From: Botryllus schlosseri
Lineage: Eukaryota
Direction of reading: 5' to 3'
Length of the DNA: 64,000 bases
Assembly (NCBI GenBank): GCA_051294905.1
Contig: CM119384.1
Coordinates: 15,252,001-15,316,000, forward strand
The notes below the pieces were generated by a model. The model had not been told where the DNA came from. It was given only the letters and a program-made list of their open reading frames with translations, and searched no databases. Position 1 is the stretch's first letter. Each line of letters opens with the position of its first letter. Below are positions 46,434-61,156 of the stretch, piece by piece. The position numbers and the translations under genes are program-made.

Positions 46434-49400
46434 TCAAAAGGATACGGTTCCCTCCGGTAGACTGGCGTTAGACAAATGAAAATACCTCAAATCGTTAACG
46501 AAAGTTTTCATGCACTGAATATAGGAAGGCTGGTCCTTTTCTTTGGTAAAATTATTGTACAAAGTCTCCTTCTGACCGGGTGTGAGACCTTGCACGTCTC
46601 GTAAAAAGTACGGCAGGAACTTATCGTGAAACGTTTCGAAATCCACGCTGGCCATGTAGTAGGTGGCGTCGTAAATCTCGTCTTGCAGCAAATCGTGCGA
46701 TTTCTGTATTAGCGCCTGCACCAGCACTGTAATGAACTGGAACAGGATGTTCTCCTCGGGAAGCAGCTTGTAGATTTTTTCGTAAAGTTTCTGCTTGTGA
46801 TTCAACGACTGCAGGGCGAGCAGGTTGTTCCGAAACACCGTAATGTCGGGTTGCAGAAAAGACTGACCGAACGCTTGCATGATAGCGAGAAAATCGTCTT
46901 TGTGCCCCAAAACGCCGACATTATTATCGGTCAGAAATGAAGCCAGCACAGGCGATGGGAAAAAATGCCGGGTCTTACGAGACAAAATATGATGCATCAA
47001 TTCAAAAAGCGACTCTTTCACGTCGGGTGACGATCTCTGCGCCACGATTGGGTAAATTCTGTGGACCGCCACGAGTATGATTCCAGGAGTCAAACTTTTA
47101 AAAGAGTTCGAGCTCTCATCAATAACGAGCTCGAGTATCTTGATAAACTTTTCGACCACGCGCGCGCCGGCAGAATTTTCGTGCGATATCGTCTTCTCTA
47201 ACACCGGCGGGGTAAAAAGTTTGAAGAAAGTATCTATCATTTTGATCGTTTTTTCCGGGCCCATCTGCGAACGCAGTCCCTTGAAACACGCCAAGAAAAA
47301 ACCCATCAGGCTCTCTGTGACTTCAGGATGGCTCATGAACAACGGGAAGAGTTCCAGTCCAAGTTCAATGCACGCTTGAAAAGATACGTAGCAAAGTTGC
47401 CGCGTCTTCACAACCTCTCCTTCGATAGCGATAACAAGATCCTCCAACACGCAAAGCGATTTTATAATGACTTGCTTGACTTCGGACATGTTTTGGTGGA
47501 TGTGCGATAATTTGTCGGCCAGCGAAAGGTAATCGCTAAGCAGCGCTTTGACGAAAGACACGTGGTTGCCCTGTCTTGCTTCCCAACATTGTTCCGAATC
47601 GGGAGTGTTAGGCCATGGGAGTATCAGGAGATTTGACAGGGCCCGGTACACTAGTTTCTGCGAATCCATGGCAAGATTGCTGCACAAGCCATTAGCGACT
47701 TCGCTGTAAAATTTTTCGATAGTGGGTGATTGCAGAAGGAAAGCCGCGCGGACGGTATTGATAGCAGACAGCAGAGTGTGGCTAGCAGGAAGTACAATCT
47801 TGTCTGGAGCTTCCGTGTTCAACATCGGAATCACCGCGTTCAAGTACCCTTGCATAATCTCCACTAATTTAGCTTGCGAATGACCGGCCTGTTGCGACTC
47901 TGTGTACAACTGAAACAACCAATGAGTGTACGGTTGCAGAACAGCTAATGCTTGAGAGTGCACTTCCGTTACGTCGGCATATAAAACTGGTGACATCCTG
48001 CCACGAATTTCATAAAATTTGATGCGACTACCGAATACCGCGAGGGTTAAAAACTTTTCGATCAGCGACATGGCCTCTGGGCGGCTGTGAAAATGCTCGC
48101 CGATGAAATACTCGGATAAGCGTCCGAACGCTTGCAGTGCGGTTGACAAGTCTTTCAAAGCACAGTGTAATTGATCATGATCACTGCCGGATGGGTTGAT
48201 GTTGAAATGTCGGTCGGGGTTTCGCGCTGGCGCGCATGTACTATCACTTATGCTGACATACAAGTTTTGATTCACGGGCAATACATGCCTGCCTATCTCC
48301 AAATATATCTTGGCGTTTTCTTCTAGAATCGGGTAGAGCATTGACATCGTTTCGCCTGGGTAAAAACTGCAAATTTTTGCGATGATCTCCAGATTATCAA
48401 TGACGTATTGCTGCCATTCGGTGTGGCCAGTGTCGTCTAACGTGTCATTGTCCAGGTCTACGAGCCGGGACTGGTTGCCCCTGAATTGAATTTGATTCAT
48501 TATTAGCCGCGCGAGCAAGTTCAAACCTTCCCGATACGGCATCAAAATCTGTCTTTGCGTCGATACGTCTTTCCCTTCAAGCTTGTTGGTTAGATAGTCT
48601 AAAAATAACTCCCAAATGTCCAGACAGCAGAGATAACCGTCAAATGTTGGTTGGTTAAATGTAAACTTGAATAGTAATTCCAGAAACTGTAGTAAAGGGA
48701 AGCTTTCATTTGCTTCAATACGACCGAAATGAACGGTCACAAAAAGCCGTAAAAACTCAGTGAACTTTTCCAGATAATCTTCGTCCAAGAGATCGAGGCC
48801 CAGTTTGGGGTCCGAGTTTTGCGTGACTTGCTTCAAAAAGTGAAAAGAAAACTTGAAAACGGTGATAAAATAATCTTCGAAGTTGGTAGGAATGCAGCTC
48901 TTCCCCATCAGTTCATTAATGCAAGTCATCGACAATACGCCGAGTCTCAAATTCGGCATGTTCGCATTAGTCGAATTCTGGTTTTGAATTAACGCGGGAT
49001 GGACTCCGTACCGCGTGTACGCGAACAGAACATTAAACAGGCGAGGGGAAATACTGGTGGAAAGCGGTATCCAACTGAACAGGTGGCACAAGCACTCCAG
49101 CGCTTCGACTATCAAGGAATGGGATATTTGCGGCAAAAATGGCGGAAGAACTTCGGACATAGCGTCAGACCCGGCGAGGTCAAATAATCCGACTAAATTC
49201 GACGATGTGGGTGACGAATTGAGAAAGGAGCTCTGATTACCAAAGCCCGACTCGGAATGCTTTTTCCATTCTTTCTCCATGGTGTCCGATATGATGTCCA
49301 GCATCAGCGGCACTTGTTGCAGTAGAAGTCTGCGAAGTTCCTTTTTTCTTTGATGTGGCAAATCCTCGCGTGGCAATGCCATTTCTTCCGATATAATCCG

Positions 49401-49859
49401 AAGAGCATTCAAGCCCATCGTTCTGGTCTCTTCGTCATTTGGAGCGCACGCCAGCTTTACAATGTTGGTAAAAAAATCCGGATAAAACATAGGCCAGTCC
49501 AGCCTCCCGATGTCGACAATACATTTCAGCAGTTTCTTTTTGATGTAAGGAATGAGGGATTTATGTCTTTCCAGTAAAATTTTATATAAAGCAGTGCGCA
49601 GTTCACCTTTCTCCGCGGAGCCAACACCAGCCCACATTTTATTCACCAAGGATTCGATAACCGATAAAGAATACATCATCACATATTCATTTCTGGTCTC
49701 GGTGAAAAAGTAAAGGCAGTCCCTCCAAGAGCCTTTTTGCTGGCCGAATTTTGATAGCTGCTCTTCAATTTCACGCTTACGTTGATTTGACGTTCCGGCG
49801 TGGAAAAATTCAGTCATAATATTTTCGAGAGAATGCAGATTGCTGTTATTTCCGGACAT
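46434..49859 (-). CDS. XPO6: Exportin-6 (actin/profilin nuclear export receptor), single coding exon, 1141 aa
   Basis: N-terminus LENIMTEFFHAGTSNQRKREIEEQL...YVMMYSL...VDIGRLDWPMFYPDFF and C-terminus FVNDLRYF...SLPEGTVSF match my recollection of vertebrate XPO6. Uninterrupted ORF. Confidence 0.95.
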   Translation of the reverse strand: MSGNNSNLHSLENIMTEFFHAGTSNQRKREIEEQLSKFGQQKGSWRDCLYFFTETRNEYVMMYSLSVIESLVNKMWAGVGSAEKGELRTALYKILLERHKSLIPYIKKKLLKCIVDIGRLDWPMFYPDFFTNIVKLACAPNDEETRTMGLNALRIISEEMALPREDLPHQRKKELRRLLLQQVPLMLDIISDTMEKEWKKHSESGFGNQSSFLNSSPTSSNLVGLFDLAGSDAMSEVLPPFLPQISHSLIVEALECLCHLFSWIPLSTSISPRLFNVLFAYTRYGVHPALIQNQNSTNANMPNLRLGVLSMTCINELMGKSCIPTNFEDYFITVFKFSFHFLKQVTQNSDPKLGLDLLDEDYLEKFTEFLRLFVTVHFGRIEANESFPLLQFLELLFKFTFNQPTFDGYLCCLDIWELFLDYLTNKLEGKDVSTQRQILMPYREGLNLLARLIMNQIQFRGNQSRLVDLDNDTLDDTGHTEWQQYVIDNLEIIAKICSFYPGETMSMLYPILEENAKIYLEIGRHVLPVNQNLYVSISDSTCAPARNPDRHFNINPSGSDHDQLHCALKDLSTALQAFGRLSEYFIGEHFHSRPEAMSLIEKFLTLAVFGSRIKFYEIRGRMSPVLYADVTEVHSQALAVLQPYTHWLFQLYTESQQAGHSQAKLVEIMQGYLNAVIPMLNTEAPDKIVLPASHTLLSAINTVRAAFLLQSPTIEKFYSEVANGLCSNLAMDSQKLVYRALSNLLILPWPNTPDSEQCWEARQGNHVSFVKALLSDYLSLADKLSHIHQNMSEVKQVIIKSLCVLEDLVIAIEGEVVKTRQLCYVSFQACIELGLELFPLFMSHPEVTESLMGFFLACFKGLRSQMGPEKTIKMIDTFFKLFTPPVLEKTISHENSAGARVVEKFIKILELVIDESSNSFKSLTPGIILVAVHRIYPIVAQRSSPDVKESLFELMHHILSRKTRHFFPSPVLASFLTDNNVGVLGHKDDFLAIMQAFGQSFLQPDITVFRNNLLALQSLNHKQKLYEKIYKLLPEENILFQFITVLVQALIQKSHDLLQDEIYDATYYMASVDFETFHDKFLPYFLRDVQGLTPGQKETLYNNFTKEKDQPSYIQCMKTFVNDLRYFHLSNASLPEGTVSF

Positions 49860-51658
49860 GTTGGCGTCAATTATATGGTATTACGATATCAAAACTTGAA
49901 ATATAAATAAACAACAAAGATAAAGTTACAGGTCATATTACTGAGAATGATATTCCATACCAATATTATGGCTTTGGGGTCAATGAAAGCTGAAATTCGT
50001 GATCTACTCTTTTACAAGGTTGAGGCCAGATAATGATAACAATTGATCCCACATATCTGTGCCCTGTGCCATCTCTACTAATGAGATCACTTGGGTATGG
50101 CTTAGCCAGGACATCATAAATAATGATCACCCAAGGTTAGATTCAGAGTGGAATTGGTGGCAACATCCATTGTTTCAAGTTTGGCAGTAGACCAGTGTTG
50201 GTGCGATCGAGAGAACAATAAGGACAGTCGAATGTATATAACTTGTTTCCAAATTTGACTTTTTCATCTAATCTTTGAAATACCATATCCAATTATGGAT
50301 CTAAATCAGGGGCTGCCAAATCAAAATGGGGCGAGCACCACTTTTCAAATTTTACAGCGGCCACGTGCCGCATCAATTCAATATTGAGATAAAATAAGCA
50401 ATAAGCTACAGTTTAACAAAAACGTCAGTGCAACGCTGTGCTCTCTAACATGGGCGAAGGGCACAATTACCACAAAAGAAATCATATTTCATCAAGGACA
50501 TACAACAACAATATTTTTACGGTGAAATCAATTTCAGCATTTCCAAATGCTTCAAGCGTTTTTCTGAAATCCCAACTCAGACCGTGGAACGCAAAATATG
50601 ACCTCGTGTGTTGGTGACCCCTGATTTAGATCCTTCTCTAATCTACTGCCGCAATCGACTCTTTGGATCAACCAGGACTGAATTTGGATATGATGGGCTT
50701 CAAACATTTCCGTCACATTAGCTCATGACCCCTATGGAATCTCGTTTCATTTTTTGAAATAAATCCTACGTGATGAGATCTTTTCTGCATAGAATAATTA
50801 TGTAATTTAACAGAAAGTTCTGTGTGACGTTTGCACCAGTTCCACTCTGGGCTCATAACAGCACTTCTCAATATCGCTCTTCAGTGAGTGATTTACATAT
50901 TAGGCATATATGTCAAAATGGGTTTGAAAACCAGGATTTCAAATAGTCAGTCGTCGCCTGTCTGTTTACACATAGCCTATAGAGTATATTTTCTGTACGA
51001 ATTGGAATTAATTTAACCGTGATACACGTAGCCTAAACCGACTAAACGTACAGCTCACGAAGTGAAACTTTTTAGGGAATGAAAGGGTGAAAGAACATTA
51101 TCGGCCTCGATTTCCCGAGAGATAAATTGTACCCTTATGACAACTTTAGCGACATAGGTATTTTGGAATGCCACTGCACCGTCAGGCCCCTCTCATCATC
51201 GTAATCTAGCCCGTAAACAGAAGCACTAGTACTGCAACTATAGATAACTAACCTATAGTGCAACAGCATAGTGTACGTTACAGCAGATTAGACACATCAA
51301 TGATCGGTCCGCCGAGTAAGCCACGCCTACGTTCTTCAGCATTTGATCGTTGTCAAACGCTAGTAATTCTTATTACAATAATTCTTGATTTTCGTGTGAT
51401 ACTCATTAAAACTGCATATAGTTGAATGAGAAGACAAATGCACAAGCACACAGAAAAAATGCAACTCATGTTGACCACAACGTTTTTTTACACAATCAAA
51501 ATCAAAATACTCAATTACGACACCTCATGGACAATATAAATATGTTTTGATTTTATCGTTTGAGTGACATGTGTAGTTTATGTGTAATTTTGCATTCAGG
51601 ATATTGTGTTCCGTCTAGATAAACTTGAGAATAGCAGCTGGCTCAAGGCGAAGAAGAA

Positions 51659-52387
51659 ATGAACACCGATGTTCCGCTAAGTCAACAAACTGGACAGACA
51701 TTTGACGTTACCTTTCTCACCGAGATTCACGATATTTTAAGCAAGTCAGTAAATTAGCAATTAAGTTTTGTTTTATTTGTTATCATCACGCGAATTTTAA
51801 TTGATAATGCAATGAAATAATGGGTGATTATAACCTTTTGTTAGCATATATATCATCATGTATCAAAACATTGTACGTCAAACGTCATCATGTATATTTT
51901 CCCATTCACCCTGACCCTGTTGGCCTCAGCAACAGGCACTTGTCCGTTTGAGATAATTTTTACATTGTTTGTGTTGGTTACGTCACAATATATCCACGAC
52001 GTCACCAAACAGCACTGCACTCTCCTTCACTCCAAGATGTAAAGTTTTTACCCTGCGTTATTACTGCAGCCCCTCCATTTATGACAGTTTGAGTCCTTCA
52101 ATCACAGACCCTCTGGCTTTGATAAGCCTAGTGATTCAATTGATTTAACATATTCATGTTTCAGGCTTGAAGTCGGACAAGACATTGAAACTCTGACGAA
52201 CAAAGTAAAGGAGCTGACGGGCAAGTTCGAGCAAGCAAAGCAGGAGATCAACTCCGAAAGTGGCATCGACTCCACCAAAGAGCGACAAGAGCTCGTGCTG
52301 AAATCTCTAAAACAGCAGCTGCAAATCAAAAAACAAGTCATTGAAAAGTACCAGAGTCTCACTCTAACCCCGAACTCACAAACTTGA
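51659..52387 (+). CDS. MED9: Mediator subunit 9, 2 exons, 102 aa
   Basis: Exons 51659-51744 (AA|GTCAGT) and 52165-52387 (TTTCAG|G) join to ...FDVTFLTEIHDILSKLEVGQDIETLTNKVKELTGKFEQAKQEINSESGIDSTKERQELVLKSLKQQLQIKKQVIEKYQSL..., matching the MED9 pattern (FLP.VH.II, KF...R..I..MPGI, L..L..Q...K..L..KY.SL). Not in the supplied ORF track. Confidence 0.85.
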
Positions 52388-52406
52388 TGCCTGACAACAC
52401 TCGGAC

Positions 52407-55400
52407 ATGGAAAATGCGAACGAACAATCGAAATATTACTTCGAGGACGAAAAGTCGAGTCCAGAAATTGTGTGTGAGTATCCCGCAAATATCCCCAAAG
52501 ACTGTCCCCTTGTTATCGACAACGGGTCTTATCAATTGAGAGCCGGGTGGACTTGTAACGATGCTCCGTCGCTTGTGTTCAAGAATGTGGTTGCAAGGAA
52601 CAGGTAAGCTTATGTTAATTAGATAGGCTGCCTGACCATAAAAAACTCCTGAAAGATTCTGAGCTTTTATATGAAGCTCGTTGTGAACAGCAACCGTTCA
52701 CGTTGCCATGTAACGCCACATTGCTGATTCTAATCTTTACATTGCCATAAGGCAGGAGTTTCTATCCTGGTGTCCGCAAACTAGTTTTAAGGGGTCCATA
52801 AAAGACCACTGTTGAAACTACAACTAGCCTATATACTATACAACTAACTAAATGGTACTTATAAGATCTGTCCTTAATTTTAACTTATCTCCACATATTG
52901 TGGATATATTCAGTGCACACCACAGGTCATAATAGCCACACGGGCGATACAAACAATAATTCTTCTTATTCTTGCGATATATGCTCAAGAATACTTGAAG
53001 TCAACCGAATTGATTTATTATGTGTTCTGCAATTAAACCGCGGCCAGCCGGCCGCTGCAAAAATAGCTACTTTGCTCCTCCTTGTAGATACGATTGCTCA
53101 TTGTGTTAATTTTGAAAATTAGATTCAGACCATTGATTTAGGTGACCTATATGGAAACACTTAACTATTATTCAAAATCTTCCATTTTCTACTAGTGCTA
53201 AACTAATGTCTTAGTTTAACCAGTTTTTCATGAGTGTATCATACATGTTTATTATACCGGCATCCTTCCTCCAAGGGGAAACCGCAAAGACCGAGACTGG
53301 GACATTTTGGTTGGTAATGATATTCCTGACTTGGAGGCTGTGAGGTGGATGATCAGAACCGCCTTCGACTTCAACGTTGTTATAAACTTTGGTATTCAGG
53401 TATGCCCTGCAATTATCTGCCCTCACATTTTTCTGCGCACTCATCACCAGTACGCTTTAATTCTATTAACAAAATTCTAATGGTATGAATGAGCCATTTC
53501 TTCCATGCTTACAGGCATTGTGCAACTGAATTATTCCTACTTTTCTACATCCACCATTTTAGCATTTAAGTGTCTAGCTCTAGCTAGATAACTTGGTCAC
53601 TTTATGTAACTGAATGTCGTTCCGAATTCTGTTATGTGGCAAATGAGTCTTGGATTTTTATGTACCGTAATTTGGCAATATAACGCTACGCTAGTATCGT
53701 GATCAATTGATCATGGAATATAATTTTGAAAATGCATTCATTTGTAGCATCGTTAGCGTATCTGCGCGAGTAATCATGATGCATTTCGCTCTTCTGATTG
53801 ATGTCGTGGGCTGATGACAATTAAAATCCTGTGATGTGTCTAGCCATTCTCCTGGGTTTCCTACTTTATGCATCTTTCCTCTCCACTTTATTTTTTTGAG
53901 ATAGCCAACAACTTCTTCAGTACTTTCACATTGTGTCAGAACTCTAGCAGAGACAAGAATTTCACTTCGAAATTGCGCTGTATTGCAGGAGAACATCCTT
54001 GACCACACATTTTCCCATCTTGGTATCGACTCTGAAGGTGAAGTACGCCATCCTCTGGTCATGACAGAGGCAGCCGCCAATCCTACTAATAGCAGGAAGC
54101 AGATGTCCGAACTTTTATTCGAAGCTTATGGCATACCCAAGGTAATGCTTCGAAATTTTAGTGGCAATTTCAGCCTGAAAATAATGTCGACTCTGACGGC
54201 AGCTGGCGTATGGAATTGATAGCATGTTCAGTTTCCATTATAATATAAGGGAATTAGGACTCGGAGACGATGCGTTGGTAATTGCTTCAGGTAATGTGAC
54301 CCGTTGACATGAGTTTTCCGTGAAATCTACATGTCCTGTAAATATTCAGGATTTCAATCTACTCACGTAATGCCGATTGTCGGGGGAGTCTTGGATTTGA
54401 AGAATTGCCAGAGAATTAATCTGGGTGGCTACAACAACGGAGCCTATCTGCAAAGGCTTTTACAGCTGCGTTTCCCCAAGCTGAGTCCTGTGTTCACACT
54501 GACTAGGTATGTTAGGTCGGCAGAGGTAGTAGGTAATGAATTGCTTCTACTTTTTCTGGTAGGTTTTGCCTATTTGTATTTCTTGCTCGTGTGGTTATGT
54601 TTTAGACTACTTCCACTTGTACTTGAACAGTTTTGTAGGCAAGTAGAGAGTAGTTTTTGGATATGCTTGCATCATTTCTATCAGTGACTGTATCATGGTA
54701 ACTGTGATATTTTAAAAAATTTTCAGAAAGCGCTACTAGAACTAAAACTACTTACTTTTGAAAACATGCAACTAGAACTAACGACATTTAAAAATTATTA
54801 CACCGCAAAGGCGCAAAATTTCGTGCACACTTTTGACTCAGCCCGCCAACGTATTCCCTGCTTCACATTCTCAGAAAAATAATTGCCCACCTCTGGCATA
54901 GGTGTTCCCGTGTCATTAAATGTTATAAACCATACCAAATTGGATTTCATTATCCTAGGCAACGCATTAATTTCTATTTTATCGGAAATATCAGACAGAG
55001 AATCGACATTTCGAAATGACGGGGTTTCAGGTTAGGCATGGGACAGTTTCAACCCCGACTCTGAGCTAGTAATGGCTGCACAAACATCGTTGAAAAGAAC
55101 ACCAGTATCTCGATTCATACAAAACGACGACACATACTTTCTAGTTGTCCTAATATTTTTTGAAATGTTACACTAGGACTAGAGCTATTCACATTTCAAA
55201 ATCCACAACTAGAACCAGAACTACTCACTGTTCAATATTCACAACTAGAACTACTCAATTTTCAAAATCTCTAACTAGAAATAAAACTACTCAAAAAACG
55301 TTAGTAAGTTGACCGTCAAATAGCTAAACGAGTAGTTTATACAAATCTGAGTGTCATGGGACATATTGCGTTAGTCGTGAAGACGCATCCAATTATCTGC

Positions 55401-58400
55401 CGAAATTATGGGACCCATCACTCAATTGTACTTTTTGGAACTACTTGAGTACTTCCATCAATTTCGACATGCCTTGGAAATTGATACTTCTACTCGTAAT
55501 TGAGTGAATATTTATGGGAACAACTCCTCTTTCCTTCATAATAACACCGCCACCTAGAACTTGAGTTGTAATCTCCTGATTGCCCAGAATCATATCATGC
55601 ATCGGTAATTTTCCCTTTAGAATGGACCAATTTCTTCGAGACATGGGCGAAATCCCTGGAAATTACGGTGACGAAATCAAAAAATGGAATGACTCAGCGT
55701 ATGAATCGTTGAACTGTGTCATGATGCAGATTCCCGAGAGAAATGTTACGTGTAAGTAATCTTGGTGACCCCAACAACTTGTAACGTGGTATTGTTGTGC
55801 AGTGTGCACCTGACACTAGGCTTACCATACGTCCTCTTTTAAGAGGATTTGTCCTCTTTTTTGACTTTTTTGAAAGTGTCCTCGGAGGACGCCCTTTTGT
55901 CCTCTTTTTTGAGATTTTGTCCTCTTTTTTGAAAATTTAGGTCAGATTCAGAACAAATTGCGAGTGATATGCCGCAAATTAGCACAGAAGTGAAGCTTGA
56001 GGCTCCGGCTTCGGAGTGAAAAACGGTGATTTTAGCTCTGAGCGAAAAGATGACCTTTTTTTTTTTTAGTCATCCACTTGGCAACGTGGAGAGTAAAACG
56101 GTATTTTGAGTTCTGAGCAGAAAAGATGACCTCTTTTTAGTCAACCGATCTCAAAGTGGGAAAAATTCACCGGTTTTTGAGAATTCTTCTCCGGTTTTGC
56201 AAGTCTGATATTTCTGAAAAAGTGTCCTCTTTTTAGATTTCCAAATTATGGTAAGCCTACCTAACACACAATCGGTACATATCATTGATCTGTGCATTCT
56301 TTGGCCCGAATTCTTGTACAAATAGTGAGTTAACATCCCCGACCACATAGCTCTGGTTTTGATTCAGTCTAGAGCAGAGGTCTCAAACACGCGGCCCGCG
56401 AGAGCATTTTGTGCGGCCCGCGACGGCATTTTGGAATTTCCAGTATTCGACAATATATTCAAGTGCCATATATTTTTTAGGTATAAGAGCTTAAAGTTCA
56501 ATTTAAAACTACTACAAAAATCACTGGAATCTCAACAAACTTTCACTATCACTTCACTATCACATCACTTTTAGAAGCTACCATGAGGTAGAAGATCAGC
56601 TATTACGTCACATTTCTAGTTCATGACGATAGAACATGACCCGTTGATGATTCGTGACTTAAAATTGTGATTTGGTTTGGTGCGACCTCCTCGTCAAATT
56701 GCTGGGTTTCGGATTGACTGGGTGATTATATAAAAATGACTCGAGTTGAGTCGGATCAAACGTTAAAATCAGACACGGACTTGCGAATCGAAACGGCGAC
56801 TTGTTAATCCTACGAGCGCAACAATCTATGAAACTGTCATGGAGAATAGTAATATATCAAAAGGTCGTAGCTTGTGCTGCTCAGGGTATATAACTATATA
56901 ATCAGGTCAGTATGGCAACCATTGGCATTCTAGGACCCCTGTGACGTATAGTTGATTACATGCTGGGTGCTGTTTGTTATCTTTGTCCATGTTATTATCG
57001 TAGGCGAGTAGGGTAGCACTGCGCTCTACAGCTGTAACGCCATTGAATTATTCGCCGATTAGACATTTCTATTTCAGGGGTTCTTAACCCGGGTCCGTAG
57101 TCCCCATCGGGGTACGAAGCACCACATCAGGGTGTGTGAGATTCATTGTGGAATTAGGCCTAGGCCTATATGCTGTGGAATATTTTCTTGGCAAATTTAT
57201 TCAACTGGAAAATAGTCTGGTGTGAATGGGCTTTCTGATTTTAATATAGGTACCATCAGAAATTGTGTTGAAAATGGACAGGCTCTATGAGAAATCTCAC
57301 TGGAAGCACAAGGGGTACGATCGCTAAAAAGGCTAAGAAGCAATGCTATTACTGTGGCTCAATAATTATTATATTCAAGATGTTATTGATAAGTTCCAAT
57401 AATAATCAAAGGCAAAATCTAACGCTGATTTAATTTGACTTTGGCAATAACAATAGCCTATATTTATTAGGACTTAAACAAAATCAGAGTTAGGCTACAC
57501 CGCTCGAATGCTCTGATCTCAGATCAATCTTCAGTATATTTTAAAATATACTACATAACATTGTGGCACGTCAAAGGTCTACTAGCTGCACTATTATAAC
57601 CCGACAGTTTTACGATTTCATGATGCATCCTCTCGTATTATGTCTATAACTTATTAATTAGAAAAAGTATGCCCGGAACAAAAAAAAATTCAAATATTTG
57701 AAAATGTGATTATATTTCGTGTCAAGCATGAATAATGCAATAGTAAATCACATTTCCACGATGTTTGTGGAATGCCTGTCTGCAAGGACCCGTCAAATAA
57801 GTCCTAGTTGGAACCTATACATTGAATATCCTGATTATTGATGCTGCGGCCTGCGGCGTCATCAAAAACTAGGAAATGGCCCGCGAGCACATTTGAGTTT
57901 GAGACCTCTGGTCTAGAGTGATACTCAGATGGCAACAGTATATATTTTATAACATTTCCCCGTTTGTAGTTTCATCCATACTTTTATGTTGCCAAAACAA
58001 TTTATCTTGCAATTTTAAAAGAAATCCACCCCCTATTTACTACTACAAGTATGCGACACCTCATCCGTATCTACTTTTAAAAATACTTTTCTACTGGAAG
58101 TAGTTTTAACATGTCTCGGAAATCGCTACTTATACTTGTAATTGAGTAGAAATTTACATCATTACTTCTACTTCTACTTGTATAGCAATGCTGACTACTT
58201 TGACCACTTGTGGACATAGATTTGCAAATTAGGAATTGTCCTCAGAATTACAGCCTTGTATTTGAGTCTTCCCTCTGATGGTATGAAATACGCTGCAACT
58301 TGATCACGTTCACAAACAGCAGCGCAATCATCTGCAGTGGTGGTCACAGATGCTACTTTAGTAGGAAATGAAGCAGAATCTGTATGATTTCAAAAGTGCT

Positions 58401-61156
58401 GTTATCTACTTTGAATGTAATCATACTCAATTTAGCTTCTCAAGCTCCCAACCCGCCGTGCGAAGTCACCGTTATGCTCGGTCAAAAACTGCGTCGGGTA
58501 AGAATTGCAATCTCTAAGCACTTCACAATCGGTCGGAGAACAGAAAGGACTATTTTCAGATGGAGTGCAGACTTTATGATCTGGAATGCATACTCGAGTT
58601 GGAAGATGAAAACACGGAGGCCTTTGCGAAAACATTGGCGGACTATGGGCTACGCGATGCTGACCACCTGAATAAAAAAATCGTCAAGGTATTTCATGAG
58701 GCCGGAGTATGACCAGGCAGGGTTGGGCAATAGAAGAGTGCTTCCACTTGAAAGGAATTATCAAGTCCTTTACAGTGACTTGATGCACTGAAGTCCAGAG
58801 TTGCTTATAAATTGATTTGTGACGCGTGTGTGAGTGAAATTCTACCAAAGCCACATAGAACAGTTTCGAAATCGTGCTGGCAGTGTTAATATGCTCATGG
58901 CGATCCGGTTTGAAATTTCCAAAATATTTAATGTCAGTTATTTGTCTGAGGAAACCTGGAGTTTATAGCTCGTAGCTCTAGCTACCTTGTTTCTCATCCA
59001 ACCTTTTTTAAATGTACTTCAGGTGTGTTTGGTCTAACATGAAAATAACAATTTCCATACGTCACCGAGTATTATTTATATGTAGGCTACTTCGGCAACA
59101 ACACAATAATTGTTTTCTGGGCATTTTTGGAATGTAGTCTACATAGTCTACAGTAGGAATGCGCGTGTAATCTATATTGTCATACGCCGATTCCGTTTTA
59201 GCTGCACAAAGAAATTGAATCCACACACGAGAAGATCACATTTCTGCAACAGAACTGCATTCTGCCGAGCCAGGTAATTCGGATAAGTGATATTGATTGT
59301 AATTATCCTTTATTGAGACCAGCAATTATAGCGTTGTGACTAGTTTATTATGCTATACATTGCAGAGAATTTTTGTTTTTCAAAGTCACAATATTGTGGA
59401 TGTTTTCGAAGTACTTATCTTACGTAGGTTTTGTGGGATCGCACTAATTTACTTTCACTTCTACTTAGAGGTACACACACAACTATAGGGATAGTGAAAT
59501 TTGTATTTTTATAATCAGGAAATAGTTGTGGGATGATATTGTACCACTTTTCCATTTGAAGTAGTTTTGACATCACTTGGAACTTGCTACCATGTGTGCT
59601 GGGTAGGCCACGCATACCTAGTAATTTTTTTGGGTTTGGATCATACGCATAATTCTGTCAGGTATGTATCGTCCCTAATTAGCTGGTGAATTATGCGATA
59701 TAGAAATAATTTTCAAGGTATTTACTTTTACATACTGCCGCTTGTATACATGATATGCGTAAATTCATCAACAGGAGAAAGCTTATCTGATCCTTGTATT
59801 ATAGGCATTTACGCATGTACGTTACGCTGATAAATTGATGCAACTTGGTAAAGTTGAAATAATTTTAAACTACCTTTTTAACCCCCTTTTACTCGGCTGG
59901 GCAGTGACCACGCACCTGCTTGTTATTATAATTTTGTCACCATACATAAGCGACTAGGTAATGCTCTAATAGTGAATATATATATTTTGCATTTATATAA
60001 TCTATGAATTTCACCTAAATTCACCTATTTGTGACATCATCAAACCCGCATGCCTGCACAAATTAGCGTACGGCGTCTATGCTTGCTACTGCTACTTGCA
60101 AGTAACAACGCTGAATACGTTCCGTTGACCACCTCTGATATCAGTTTGACTTTTGTCACCAAATTTTTCACTGGTCTACTTCGCCCGCAATGCCTGCTGC
60201 CATGACAGGTACCGATCCGAATCGAAAAGCATCAGGCGTTGGAGATAATCTTTCAACCAATGCTGGTCGGGTACGAACAAGCAGGCGTCGGTGATGTTCT
60301 CGAGACGATTTTTCGTCAGTACGATCCTGACCAATGCAGCAGAATGGCAAGGAACGTGCTGATAACAGGTGAGTCATAAGCATGAAAACCCCTTCTTATA
60401 CCAAGAGGTGGGCAGTGGTCAGAAACGTAGCGCTCCTACTATTTTAGAGAACTCAAGTGGATTTGGCCTACTTAGCCGTGTGTTTATGTTATTAGACTGC
60501 TTTCGATTCGTATTGGGAAGTTTTTTGAGTAAATACACGTACTTATTACCCATTTTGATTTTGTAATGCAGAGTTTTGTGGTCAGTTTGCACAACCTTTG
60601 CGAGTGAAATTTCATAAGAACCCGTGAAATATCATGGCGGCTAAATACAGTTTCGAAGATTCTTTGTGATGTCATTAGCCATTTTGTGTTAGTCGCAAGG
60701 ATGGATTTTGCGAGTAGCCCTCTTCGATTAAATGCTATAAGTAACGACCCCTCTACAGAGTGAGTGGACTATTTGAAAGTGCTCAACTTTAATCTCTCCT
60801 CCTAGCTAGCTTGAACGTTGGTTTCTATTTCGATATGGCTGAATGTATAAGCGGATGAATTGAAGAAATGACCGTTTTACGTGATTTCTGCAGGAGGGAA
60901 CACGCAGTACAGTGGCTTCAAGCAAAGAATCGTGGCCGAGCTGACTGCGTGCAGACCCTTTGGTTCGGAGATCATTGTGAGAGAAGCCACGGACCCCAGT
61001 CTAGACGCATACAACGGAGCGAGACAGTGGGCTAAAGAAAATGCCGACCGAAACGACGTCTGGATGACAAAGCGGGATTTTCTCGACAACGGATGGGATT
61101 ATTTGAAAGAACATGGCGCTTCAAACAAGTACTTTGCTACATCTGGTCATACATGA
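52407..61156 (+). CDS. ACTR5: Actin-related protein 5 (INO80 subunit), 11 exons, about 508 aa
   Basis: Exons 52407-52603, 53276-53399, 53989-54141, 54203-54290, 54350-54506, 55621-55751, 58445-58497, 58560-58688, 59202-59273, 60209-60368, 60894-61156 are in phase (1527 nt). Motifs [72 protein letters not shown]. Confidence 0.92.
55817..56259. mobile_element. MITE family D copy in an ACTR5 intron
   Basis: TIRs TAGGCTTACCAT / ATGGTAAGCCTA, flanks CCTGACAC / CCTAACAC. Confidence 0.82.
56375..57910. mobile_element. hAT element in an ACTR5 intron, with a probable nested MITE at about 57075-57345
   Basis: TIRs CAGAGGTCTCAAAC / GTTTGAGACCTCTG, perfect TSD GTCTAGAG. Confidence 0.9.

What the first reader, a model, noticed from the sequence alone, without database searches (positions are those of the whole stretch)
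52165..52603. MED9 stop lies 19 nt from the ACTR5 start: operon-like or bicistronic junction
Seen: MED9 TGA ends at 52387 and the ACTR5 ATG is at 52407, same strand. The spacer TGCCTGACAACACTCGGAC has no AG and no AATAAA and is not a multiple of 3, so there is no readthrough fusion. The nearest AGs (52353-52356) lie inside the MED9 CDS. The stop overlaps an ATG (TGATG) that opens a 50-codon out-of-frame ORF (52387-52539) over the ACTR5 start. Established: tunicates and nematodes resolve polycistronic pre-mRNAs by SL trans-splicing. Inference: a trans-splice site inside MED9 making the two mRNAs mutually exclusive, a true bicistronic mRNA using reinitiation or leaky scanning, or an ACTR5 promoter within MED9. 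Any of these couples a Mediator subunit to an INO80 subunit.
Basis: partly seen in the sequence, partly recalled or inferred. Interest (0 to 1): 0.72.

Follow-up and report, generated by a model that had tools for sequence, protein, structure and literature searches.

The report
Conserved sea-squirt MED9–ACTR5 two-gene transcript
In this sea-squirt genome the Mediator gene MED9 and the chromatin-remodeller gene ACTR5 lie 19 bases apart and are copied into one RNA, a pairing kept across many sea squirts; here the gap lacks the splice signal that normally separates such gene pairs.

Summary
MED9 (2 exons, 102 aa) stops at 52385-52387 and ACTR5/Arp5 starts at 52407. The 19-nt gap has no AG. An in-frame TGA upstream leaves 52407 as the only possible ACTR5 start.

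The pair is an old tunicate two-gene unit. MED9 directly precedes ACTR5 in at least 10 tunicates:
- Gaps are 5-31 nt in Styela clava and five species known only from cDNA contigs.
- Gaps are at least 50 nt in three others; two of these, including Clavelina, show clear acceptor-like sequences.
- Spliced cDNA contigs carry both ORFs in five relatives.
- A cDNA contig of this species runs unbroken from the MED9 coding sequence through the gap and ACTR5 exon 1.

Ciona-type resolution (SL acceptor and poly(A) site at one AG in the gap) cannot happen inside this gap. The ACTR5 leader must therefore contain MED9 coding sequence.

Whether ACTR5 is translated from the dicistronic mRNA (my best guess, about 0.4) or from an SL-trans-spliced or internally started RNA is unresolved. 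Raw RNA reads gave nothing. Tests for AUG depletion and RNA structure were negative or inconclusive.

The scan has noted similar AG-less short-gap pairs elsewhere in this genome (TM2D2-IGBP1, SMIM13-EXOSC3, COA4-SANBR).

The parts
51600..51658 (+). MED9 5' leader, downstream of an acceptor-like ttgcattcag at 51590-51599
   Evidence: Sequence. An X10 cDNA contig covers 51606-51690, with 24 further unmatched letters on its 5' side (record 1). Whether those letters are a spliced leader is unknown.
51659..51744 (+). MED9 coding exon 1 (ATG at 51659)
   Evidence: Model translated. The joint 51744>52165 is seen in an X10 contig.
51745..52164 (+). MED9 intron 1 (GT..AG); holds a cluster of four ACGTCA motifs
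   Evidence: GT..AG joint that skips 420 nt. Motif cluster.
52165..52387 (+). MED9 coding exon 2, ending in TGA at 52385-52387. It has no ATG in any frame before the TGATG at its end.
   Evidence: Pfam Med9 1.3e-10. ATG positions.
52388..52406 (+). 19-nt intercistronic gap TGCCTGACAACACTCGGAC, with no AG
   Evidence: Two SNPs in an X10 allele (52392 T>C, 52405 A>C) create no AG either. The AG-free run extends over 52357-52443.
52387..52539 (+). Out-of-frame 50-codon ORF that starts at the ATG overlapping the MED9 stop; probably incidental
   Evidence: It has no conserved counterpart in L001, L003 or L008, and only different short upstream ATGs in S. clava and L005.
52407..52603 (+). ACTR5 (Arp5) coding exon 1
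   Evidence: Pfam Actin. tblastn with a relative's Arp5 gives 82% identity. An X10 contig runs unbroken over 52225-52604 (record 3).
52407..61156 (+). Whole ACTR5 gene. About 10 coding exons, including 53276-53399, 53989-54141, 54203-54291 and about 54346-54507. Stop TGA at 61154-61156.
   Evidence: tblastn of P0007 on the window, exon hits, and joints 53399>53989 and 54141>54203 in X10.
46434..49859 (-). Divergent upstream neighbour, an exportin-like single-exon ORF. It shows that MED9 is the first gene of the unit.
   Evidence: Pfam Xpo1 4e-18.

Best explanation
MED9 and ACTR5 form an ancient tunicate two-gene transcription unit driven from the MED9 promoter.

Shown:
- The two genes are co-linear, 19 nt apart and single copy.
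- RNA-derived contigs bridge them.
- The pairing is conserved in at least 10 tunicates.
- Relatives with longer gaps (Clavelina 124 nt, one ENA genome 50 nt) have classical pyrimidine-tract/AG acceptors just before the ACTR5 ATG, as in SL-resolved operons.
- In the styelid lineage the gap has shrunk to 12-31 nt. In this species and two relatives it contains no AG.

Any ACTR5-coding RNA must carry MED9 coding sequence in its leader.

Inferred, and my preferred mechanism (about 0.4): the spliced MED9-ACTR5 dicistronic RNA is itself the ACTR5 mRNA. Ribosomes reach the ACTR5 AUG (good context, GACAUGG) in one of two ways. Either they reinitiate 19 nt after terminating the short 102-codon MED9 ORF, or they scan past the MED9 AUG and through the 242 nt from the start of MED9 exon 2 (52165) to the ACTR5 AUG, which hold only one weak-context AUG. 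A separate, more abundant MED9-only RNA ending near the junction is suggested by contig depth.
For: - Sequence and gene models.
- X10 cDNA contigs: the MED9 e1-e2 joint, and a 380-nt contig running unbroken over 52225-52604 across stop, gap and ACTR5 exon 1. Depth is about 11-13 over MED9, at most 4.6 over ACTR5 exon 1 and about 3 over exons 2-4.
- Dicistronic, intron-free cDNA contigs in relatives:
  - L003: a complete 1933-nt contig with MED9, a 12-nt AG-less gap and a full 511-aa ACTR5. L004 is a replicate from another run.
  - L005 and L006: 19-nt AG-less gap.
  - L001: 31 nt.
  - L008: 5 nt.
  - L016: 19 nt.
- S. clava genome: 18 nt.
- Clavelina and L015 have canonical acceptors.
- Among five styelid-like species, AG in the gap is present in only 2. 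Gap sequences are unrelated while gap lengths stay short. This argues against a conserved acceptor in the gap.
- After the first 13 nt of MED9 there is no ATG until the TGATG at the stop. All out-of-frame ATGs in relatives open ORFs of 3-19 codons.
- A second pair in this genome, TM2D2-IGBP1, has a 9-nt gap and only 3 ATGs in 564 nt.
- Published baseline: Ciona operons abut at an AG that serves both as acceptor and as poly(A) site (PMC1488885).
Against: - No read-level evidence. Three raw RNA runs gave 0-2 reads, so no cap, SL or poly(A) ends were seen.
- Assembled contigs can merge overlapping or precursor RNAs. L008 visibly includes unprocessed upstream sequence, and Satou 2006 treats dicistronic ESTs as rare precursors.
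- The scarcity of AUGs is fully explained by the protein's composition. Synonymous resampling expects only 0.24-0.67 ATG in exon 2. Of 59 non-tunicate MED9 proteins, 37% also lack Met there.
- The MED9 AUG has a purine at -3 in 5 of 6 species, which is not a leaky context (the context print was truncated at each MED9 start).
- No RNA structure is detectable at the junction (z from -0.6 to +0.9).
- Reinitiation after about 100 codons is normally inefficient (general knowledge).
- A stop codon upstream of 9 splice junctions would invite NMD (inference).
Confidence: 0.4

Rival explanations
1. SL trans-splicing upstream of the gap. The spliced leader is added at an acceptor inside the MED9 region. 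The most plausible site is the strong cis-acceptor of MED9 exon 2 (catgtttcag|G at 52164/52165). That would remove exon 1, which holds the MED9 ATG, and turn the ATG-free exon 2 into a 242-nt ACTR5 leader. A weaker candidate is AGAG at 52353-52356. Each pre-mRNA would then yield either MED9 or ACTR5.
For: - Tunicates trans-splice over half of their genes, and 72% of Ciona operon downstream genes have SL ESTs (PMC2760879).
- SL addition to an internal exon acceptor has been seen in Ciona operon 42 (PMC1488885).
- In every species examined, almost all extra ATGs lie in the exon-1 part (for example 6 in S. clava). The exon-2 part has 0-1.
- The two genomes with an intron at this position (this window and S. 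clava) have tiny gaps. The two with an intronless MED9 (Clavelina, L015) have long gaps with their own acceptors.
- Other notes of this scan report SL genes in this genome.
Against: - No SL-bearing read or loose end was seen at 52165 or 52357, although SL tips are too short to survive assembly.
- An upstream donor normally makes cis-splicing win over trans-splicing (general knowledge).
- The AGAG at 52353-52356 sits in a purine-rich context.
- No AG position is conserved within the last 60 nt of MED9 across species.
- The ATG contrast between the exons is as expected from the amino-acid sequence.
- In the TM2D2-IGBP1 pair the upstream ORF is single-exon, so this route is not available there.
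Confidence: 0.3
2. ACTR5 has an independent promoter inside MED9 (intron 1 or exon 2). ACTR5 mRNAs would start within MED9 exon 2, or in the intron. MED9 mRNAs would end near or beyond the junction. The two genes would then simply overlap, and the assemblies merge them.
For: - MED9 intron 1 holds the densest ACGTCA (CRE half-site) cluster of the 64-kb window, four sites in 125 nt.
- Exon 2 is ATG-free, so it would make a harmless leader.
- Contig depth differs about 3-4-fold between MED9 and ACTR5 in X10.
Against: - The motif cluster is absent from the S. clava intron.
- The tight adjacency is conserved even where MED9 is intronless and the gap is 5-50 nt. That fits co-transcription better than many independent internal promoters.
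- No contig coverage falls within intron 1.
- No TSS data are available.
Confidence: 0.13
3. An ordinary Ciona-type operon after all. Cleavage/polyadenylation of MED9 and SL addition to ACTR5 both occur within the 19-nt gap, at a non-AG acceptor or on an allele that carries an AG.
For: - Relatives with an AG in equally short gaps could work this way: S. clava TAAAG/ATAG, L008 TAAAAG|CAATG, and L016 with a good cttctaacTGAcgttcag acceptor.
- Ciona operon upstream genes usually lack AATAAA (PMC1488885).
- The higher depth over MED9 suggests a MED9 3' end near the junction.
Against: - Neither the reference nor the second allele seen in X10 has an AG in the gap.
- L003/L004 and L005/L006 lack one as well.
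- Non-AG trans-splice acceptors are not an established class in the papers read.
Confidence: 0.07
4. Artefact: a wrong gene model or a mis-assembly creates a false adjacency.
For: None found.
Against: - Introns are confirmed by cDNA joints.
- Both genes are single copy.
- The same layout is present in the S. clava and Clavelina genomes and in cDNA contigs from six other runs.
Confidence: 0.02

Closest known systems
Ciona intestinalis SL-resolved operons (Satou et al. 2006, PMC1488885; Satou et al. 2008, PMC2760879)
   Same: Same-strand housekeeping genes less than 100 bp apart, transcribed together. There is no AATAAA. Dicistronic cDNAs are detectable. The phylum is the same, and relatives of this locus (Clavelina, L015, L016) show acceptor-like sequences directly before ACTR5.
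   Different: In Ciona the boundary is an AG whose G receives the upstream poly(A) and after which the SL is joined. Here, and in two relatives, the whole stop-to-start gap lacks AG. It is only 19 nt, which leaves no room for separate UTRs. No SL junction has been observed.
C. elegans SL1-type operons without intercistronic space (as cited in PMC1488885)
   Same: The upstream 3' end and the downstream acceptor coincide, and expression of the two genes can be mutually exclusive.
   Different: Those operons still use an AG acceptor and an AAUAAA signal. Neither is present here.
Green-algal bicistronic mRNAs translated by leaky scanning (Duenas et al. 2024, PMC11291117)
   Same: A short upstream ORF, a short gap, few AUGs before ORF 2, and conservation of the pairing.
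   Different: The algal loci show weak ORF-1 Kozak contexts and statistically significant AUG depletion. Here the MED9 AUG context is reasonably strong and the AUG scarcity is not significant. Mature dicistronic mRNA is not proven.
Viral termination-reinitiation (TURBS-type; reviewed in PMC10275272, title and abstract only)
   Same: The stop and the restart codon lie within a few tens of nucleotides after a full-length ORF.
   Different: The viral cases depend on structured or 18S-complementary elements upstream of the stop. No significant structure was found here.
Animal dicistronic genes such as SNURF-SNRPN, MOCS2A/B and Drosophila Adh-Adhr (recalled from memory, not tested here)
   Same: A small upstream ORF and a larger downstream ORF on one spliced mRNA.
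   Different: Those organisms lack SL trans-splicing. Here an SL route is available and ancestral for this very pair.

Membership tests
Tunicate (Ciona-type) SL-resolved operon | Same-strand neighbours separated by less than 100 bp (operational definition in PMC2760879) | tested here: met
   19 nt between the MED9 stop and the ACTR5 ATG. Gaps are 5-124 nt in 9 other tunicates.
Tunicate (Ciona-type) SL-resolved operon | RNA spanning the intercistronic boundary | tested here: met
   X10 contig over 52225-52604. Dicistronic spliced contigs L001, L003-L006, L008 and L016. The caveat is that contigs are not single molecules.
Tunicate (Ciona-type) SL-resolved operon | AG trans-splice acceptor at the boundary, between the upstream stop and the downstream ATG | tested here: not met
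   There is no AG from 52357 to 52443, in the reference or in the X10 allele. The gaps of L003/L004 and L005/L006 also lack AG.
Tunicate (Ciona-type) SL-resolved operon | Spliced leader on the downstream mRNA, and upstream poly(A) added at the acceptor G | not testable with these tools
   Raw RNA runs X16, X17 and X20 laid 0-2 reads and the single read-laying run is spent. SL tips are lost in assembled contigs. The Ciona SL pattern is not enriched in this genome.
Leaky-scanning bicistronic mRNA (green-algal type) | Depletion of AUGs upstream of ORF 2 beyond expectation | tested here: inconclusive
   Only 3 ATGs occur in 328 nt. However, synonymous resampling expects 0.24-0.67 in exon 2, and 37% of 59 non-tunicate MED9 proteins lack Met there.
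Leaky-scanning bicistronic mRNA (green-algal type) | Weak initiation context at ORF 1 | tested here: not met
   The base at -3 is G or A in the window, L001, L003, L005 and L008. Only S. clava has T, and it has a second in-frame ATG. No species-specific Kozak model was built.
Termination-reinitiation (TURBS-like) | Restart codon close to the stop codon | tested here: met
   Gaps of 5, 12, 18, 19, 19, 19 and 31 nt in seven species.
Termination-reinitiation (TURBS-like) | Conserved structured element upstream of the stop | tested here: not met
   Folding about 140 nt around the junction in six species gave z-scores from -0.61 to +0.92. Complementarity to 18S rRNA was not tested.
Mediator subunit 9 (Pfam PF07544) and actin-related protein 5 | Significant profile or ortholog match | tested here: met
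   Med9 at 1.3e-10, above the curated cut-off. The nearest named MED9-side hit is an uncharacterized S. clava protein with a Med9 Pfam domain. The ACTR5 relatives' best named hits are 'actin-related protein 5' of S. clava, Clavelina and vertebrates. Window exons are 61-85% identical to a relative's Arp5.

The most novel reading that the evidence does not exclude
In styelid sea squirts a set of ancient SL-type operons (MED9-ACTR5, and the TM2D2-IGBP1, SMIM13-EXOSC3 and COA4-SANBR pairs noted elsewhere in this genome) has lost the intercistronic acceptor. These pairs are now expressed as true dicistronic mRNAs. The second protein is made by reinitiation or leaky scanning after a short first ORF. 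This would be a class of translationally coupled gene pairs in a chordate that still has SL trans-splicing.
Probability: 0.33. Interest if true: 0.75.

Novelty: new variant of a known kind. Interest (0 to 1): 0.5.

Why it matters
Tunicate operons are textbook cases of polycistronic pre-mRNAs resolved by spliced-leader trans-splicing at an AG that also marks the upstream poly(A) site. This pair is clearly descended from such an operon, because relatives keep the acceptor. In this species and two relatives, however, the acceptor is gone and the cistrons are 12-19 nt apart.

If ACTR5, a conserved INO80 subunit, is translated from the dicistronic RNA, the locus would show how an SL-resolved operon can turn into a translationally coupled one in a chordate. 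Together with the other short-gap pairs in this genome, it would give a natural system for studying reinitiation after full-length ORFs.

If instead the leader is added at the MED9 exon-2 acceptor, the locus would be a clean example of a cis-versus-trans splicing choice that decides which of two proteins a pre-mRNA encodes.

On either reading, Mediator and INO80 subunit expression have been physically linked throughout ascidian evolution.

Tried and rejected
- Raw RNA reads. X16, X17 and X20 (same species label) laid 0-2 reads on 51100-54599.
- Ciona SL search. The Ciona leader plus GT, with up to 2 mismatches, gave 55 hits in the genome against 37 for the reversed control. There is no enrichment, so the species' SL was not identified.
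- AUG-depletion tests. AUG counts are low but as expected from the amino-acid sequence. Absence of Met is common in MED9 of other animals. I rejected this as positive evidence for leaky scanning.
- RNA structure at the junction. Nothing differs from shuffled controls.
- Retrocopies that might preserve a mature mRNA 5' end. Both genes are single copy.
- Readthrough fusion. It is out of frame here. In S. clava the gap is in frame but blocked by TAG. Only in L003 is it in frame and open. It is therefore not a conserved mechanism.
- The 50-codon overlapping ORF at 52387-52539 is not conserved.
- The AG-free run across the junction (89 nt) is long but not exceptional: 29 of 3319 inter-AG gaps in the window are at least as long.
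- Species identity of the Logan runs. No paper in the library cites the accessions.
- The contig for P0001 (own species, SRR25569784) had no DNA available and looks unspliced.
- L020, a TARA metagenome MED9 of unknown taxon, is not followed by ACTR5.
Full report
**1. Observation**

- MED9 is encoded by 51659-51744 and 52165-52387 (102 aa, TGA at 52385-52387).
- Exon 2 matches Pfam Med9 at 1.3e-10, above the curated cut-off.
- ACTR5 starts at ATG 52407, and its exon 1 runs to 52603. It matches Pfam Actin at 5e-5 and is 82% identical to a relative's Arp5.
- The gap 52388-52406 is TGCCTGACAACACTCGGAC: 19 nt, with no AG and no AATAAA.
- The nearest upstream AGs are 52353-52356.
- In the ACTR5 frame a TGA sits at 52392-52394. 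With no acceptor available, 52407 is the only possible start.
- The TGATG ATG opens a 50-codon out-of-frame ORF at 52387-52539.
- ACTR5 continues through about ten coding exons to TGA at 61154-61156.
- The upstream neighbour is a divergent, single-exon exportin-like gene at 46434-49859 on the minus strand. MED9 is therefore the first gene of the unit.
- Both genes are single copy in the 495-Mb genome.

**2. RNA evidence in this species**

Three raw-read RNA runs labelled as this species laid 0-2 reads, which is no test. Run X10, held as assembled contigs, is evidently cDNA because it shows GT..AG joints. From X10:
- It confirms the MED9 intron (51744>52165) and two ACTR5 introns (53399>53989, 54141>54203).
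- It contains a 380-nt contig running unbroken from 52225 inside the MED9 coding sequence, through the stop and the gap, to 52604, one base past the end of ACTR5 exon 1 (52603).
- That allele carries two SNPs in the gap (52392 T>C, 52405 A>C). Neither creates an AG.
- Contig depth is about 11-13 over MED9, at most 4.6 over ACTR5 exon 1, and about 3 over exons 2-4.
- No contig enters ACTR5 intron 1.
- The depth step hints at an additional MED9-only RNA that ends near the junction. The depths are low and come from one small run.
- A contig across two genes does not prove a single molecule.

**3. Comparative evidence**

I searched for relatives of MED9 exon 2 and of a relative's ACTR5. I then fetched the contigs that encode them. 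MED9 lies immediately upstream of ACTR5, on the same strand, in at least ten tunicates (junctions).

| Source | Kind | Stop-to-ATG gap | AG in gap |
|---|---|---|---|
| L008 | cDNA | 5 nt (TAAaagcaATG) | yes |
| L003, L004 | cDNA, two runs | 12 nt | no |
| Styela clava (L002) | genome | 18 nt | two |
| This window | genome | 19 nt | no |
| L005, L006 (MED9 about 85% identical) | cDNA, two runs | 19 nt | no |
| L016 | cDNA | 19 nt | yes, good cttctaacTGAcgttcag acceptor |
| L001 | cDNA | 31 nt | one |
| L015 | ENA genome contig, both genes intronless | 50 nt | yes, tttttag/ttttag |
| L014 | cDNA | at least 51 nt | yes |
| Clavelina lepadiformis (L007) | genome | 124 nt, ending tcctttttttgttcttattttgaag\|tATG | yes, textbook acceptor |

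- L003 is a complete, fully spliced 1933-nt contig. It has a 43-nt leader, MED9, the gap, a 511-aa ACTR5 and a 24-nt trailer.
- One exception, L013, has an alpha-SNAP gene upstream of ACTR5 instead of MED9.
- The pair is therefore an old tunicate unit. Its ancestral form looks like a normal SL-resolved operon.
- In the styelid-like group the gap has collapsed, its sequence is unconstrained, and an AG comes and goes (2 of 5 species).

**4. What is known**

- In Ciona about 20% of genes lie in operons, defined as same-strand pairs less than 100 bp apart. 72% of downstream genes have SL ESTs (PMC2760879).
- Most Ciona operons have no intercistronic DNA. The G of the acceptor AG receives the upstream poly(A), and the SL is joined to the next base. 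16 of 18 lack AATAAA. Dicistronic ESTs are regarded as rare precursors (PMC1488885).
- The missing AATAAA here is therefore normal. The missing AG is not. Ciona-type resolution cannot take place within 52388-52406, so the ACTR5 leader must include MED9 coding sequence.

**5. Mechanism tests**

Leaky scanning:
- The MED9-to-ACTR5 stretch has only three ATGs: the MED9 start, one at +10 opening a 3-codon ORF, and the TGATG.
- In relatives all extra ATGs open ORFs of 3-19 codons, and almost all lie in the exon-1 part.
- Resampling synonymous codons predicts only 0.24-0.67 ATG in exon 2.
- Of 59 non-tunicate MED9 representatives, 37% have no Met in the homologous region.
- The scarcity is thus compatible with leaky scanning but is not evidence for it.
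- The MED9 AUG mostly has a purine at -3.

Reinitiation:
- The short gap (5-31 nt in seven species) fits.
- Folding the junction in six species shows no structure beyond shuffled controls.

Trans-splicing upstream of the gap:
- No AG position is conserved in the last 60 nt of MED9, and AGAG at 52353-52356 is purine-rich.
- A more attractive site is the exon-2 acceptor at 52164/52165. SL addition there would drop the exon that holds the MED9 ATG and leave an ATG-free 242-nt leader.
- Ciona operon 42 shows that the SL can join an internal acceptor.
- This could not be tested.

Internal promoter:
- MED9 intron 1 has the densest ACGTCA cluster in the window.
- The cluster is not conserved in S. 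clava.

**6. Other pairs in this genome**

Earlier notes of this scan list TM2D2-IGBP1 (9 nt), SMIM13-EXOSC3 (13 nt) and COA4-SANBR (18 nt) as similar junctions. I fetched the first pair. The gap is TTCCTCATC. Both ORFs are single-exon. The 555-nt TM2D2 ORF has only three ATGs. An exon-skipping SL route is not available there. This nudges me towards a translational mechanism for the class. It is one extra locus, and an acceptor-like cttacacccgcag lies 37 nt upstream of the IGBP1 ATG.

**7. Verdict**

Shown:
- a real 19-nt junction that is conserved and co-transcribed between MED9 and ACTR5;
- membership in the broad class of tunicate operons;
- failure of the defining boundary-AG feature of Ciona-type operons.

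Inferred:

| How ACTR5 is expressed | Confidence |
|---|---|
| Translation from the spliced dicistronic RNA | about 0.4 |
| SL addition upstream of the gap, most likely at the exon-2 acceptor | about 0.3 |
| Internal promoter inside MED9 | about 0.13 |
| Cryptic resolution within the gap | about 0.07 |
| Artefact | about 0.02 |

I class the finding as a new variant of a known kind, with moderate interest of 0.5. Long-read cDNA or SL-PCR would settle it quickly.

Noticed in passing
window 46434-49859 (-): Single-exon 1141-aa ORF with an exportin-1-like domain (Pfam Xpo1, 4e-18). It is divergent from MED9, and the two start codons are 1.8 kb apart, so a shared bidirectional promoter region is possible.
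   Followed up: partly
window 51875-52005 (MED9 intron 1): Four ACGTCA/TGACGT motifs within 125 nt, plus one at 51703 in exon 1. This is the densest cluster in the 64-kb window and could be an internal promoter. It is not conserved in the Styela clava intron.
   Followed up: partly
window ~56368-57915 (ACTR5 intron): A roughly 1.5-kb insert bounded by terminal inverted repeats (tctagagcagaggtctcaaac ... gtttgagacctctggtctaga). It looks like a DNA-transposon or MITE-type element.
   Followed up: no
L013:196-3158 (Logan SRR25569774): In one distant tunicate, ACTR5 is preceded by an alpha-SNAP gene 416 nt upstream instead of MED9. The MED9-ACTR5 link has therefore been broken at least once.
   Followed up: partly
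L007:6001-9816 and L015:5001-10783: In Clavelina lepadiformis and in an unnamed ENA tunicate genome, an arginyl-tRNA synthetase gene follows ACTR5 on the same strand. This gives a MED9-ACTR5-RARS synteny, and in both genomes MED9 and ACTR5 are intronless.
   Followed up: no
L002:14449-16197 (Styela clava): A 582-aa protein-kinase gene is called inside an intron of S. clava ACTR5.
   Followed up: no
L003:359-376: The 12-nt gap of this relative (TCAAACTTTGCT) is in frame and free of stops. Readthrough of the MED9 TGA would therefore fuse MED9 to ACTR5 in that species only.
   Followed up: partly
L017 minus strand (G000:C7:10285624-10289571): The TM2D2-IGBP1 pair of the same genome has a 9-nt gap (TTCCTCATC) and both ORFs are single-exon. 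Only 3 ATGs occur in the 564 nt before the IGBP1 start. An acceptor-like cttacacccgcag lies 37 nt upstream of the IGBP1 ATG.
   Followed up: partly
window 51606 (X10 record 1): A 109-nt cDNA contig matches 51606-51690 and carries 24 unmatched letters on its 5' side. This lies just downstream of the acceptor-like cag at 51597-51599, so it may be a spliced leader on MED9. The letters were not shown by the tool.
   Followed up: no
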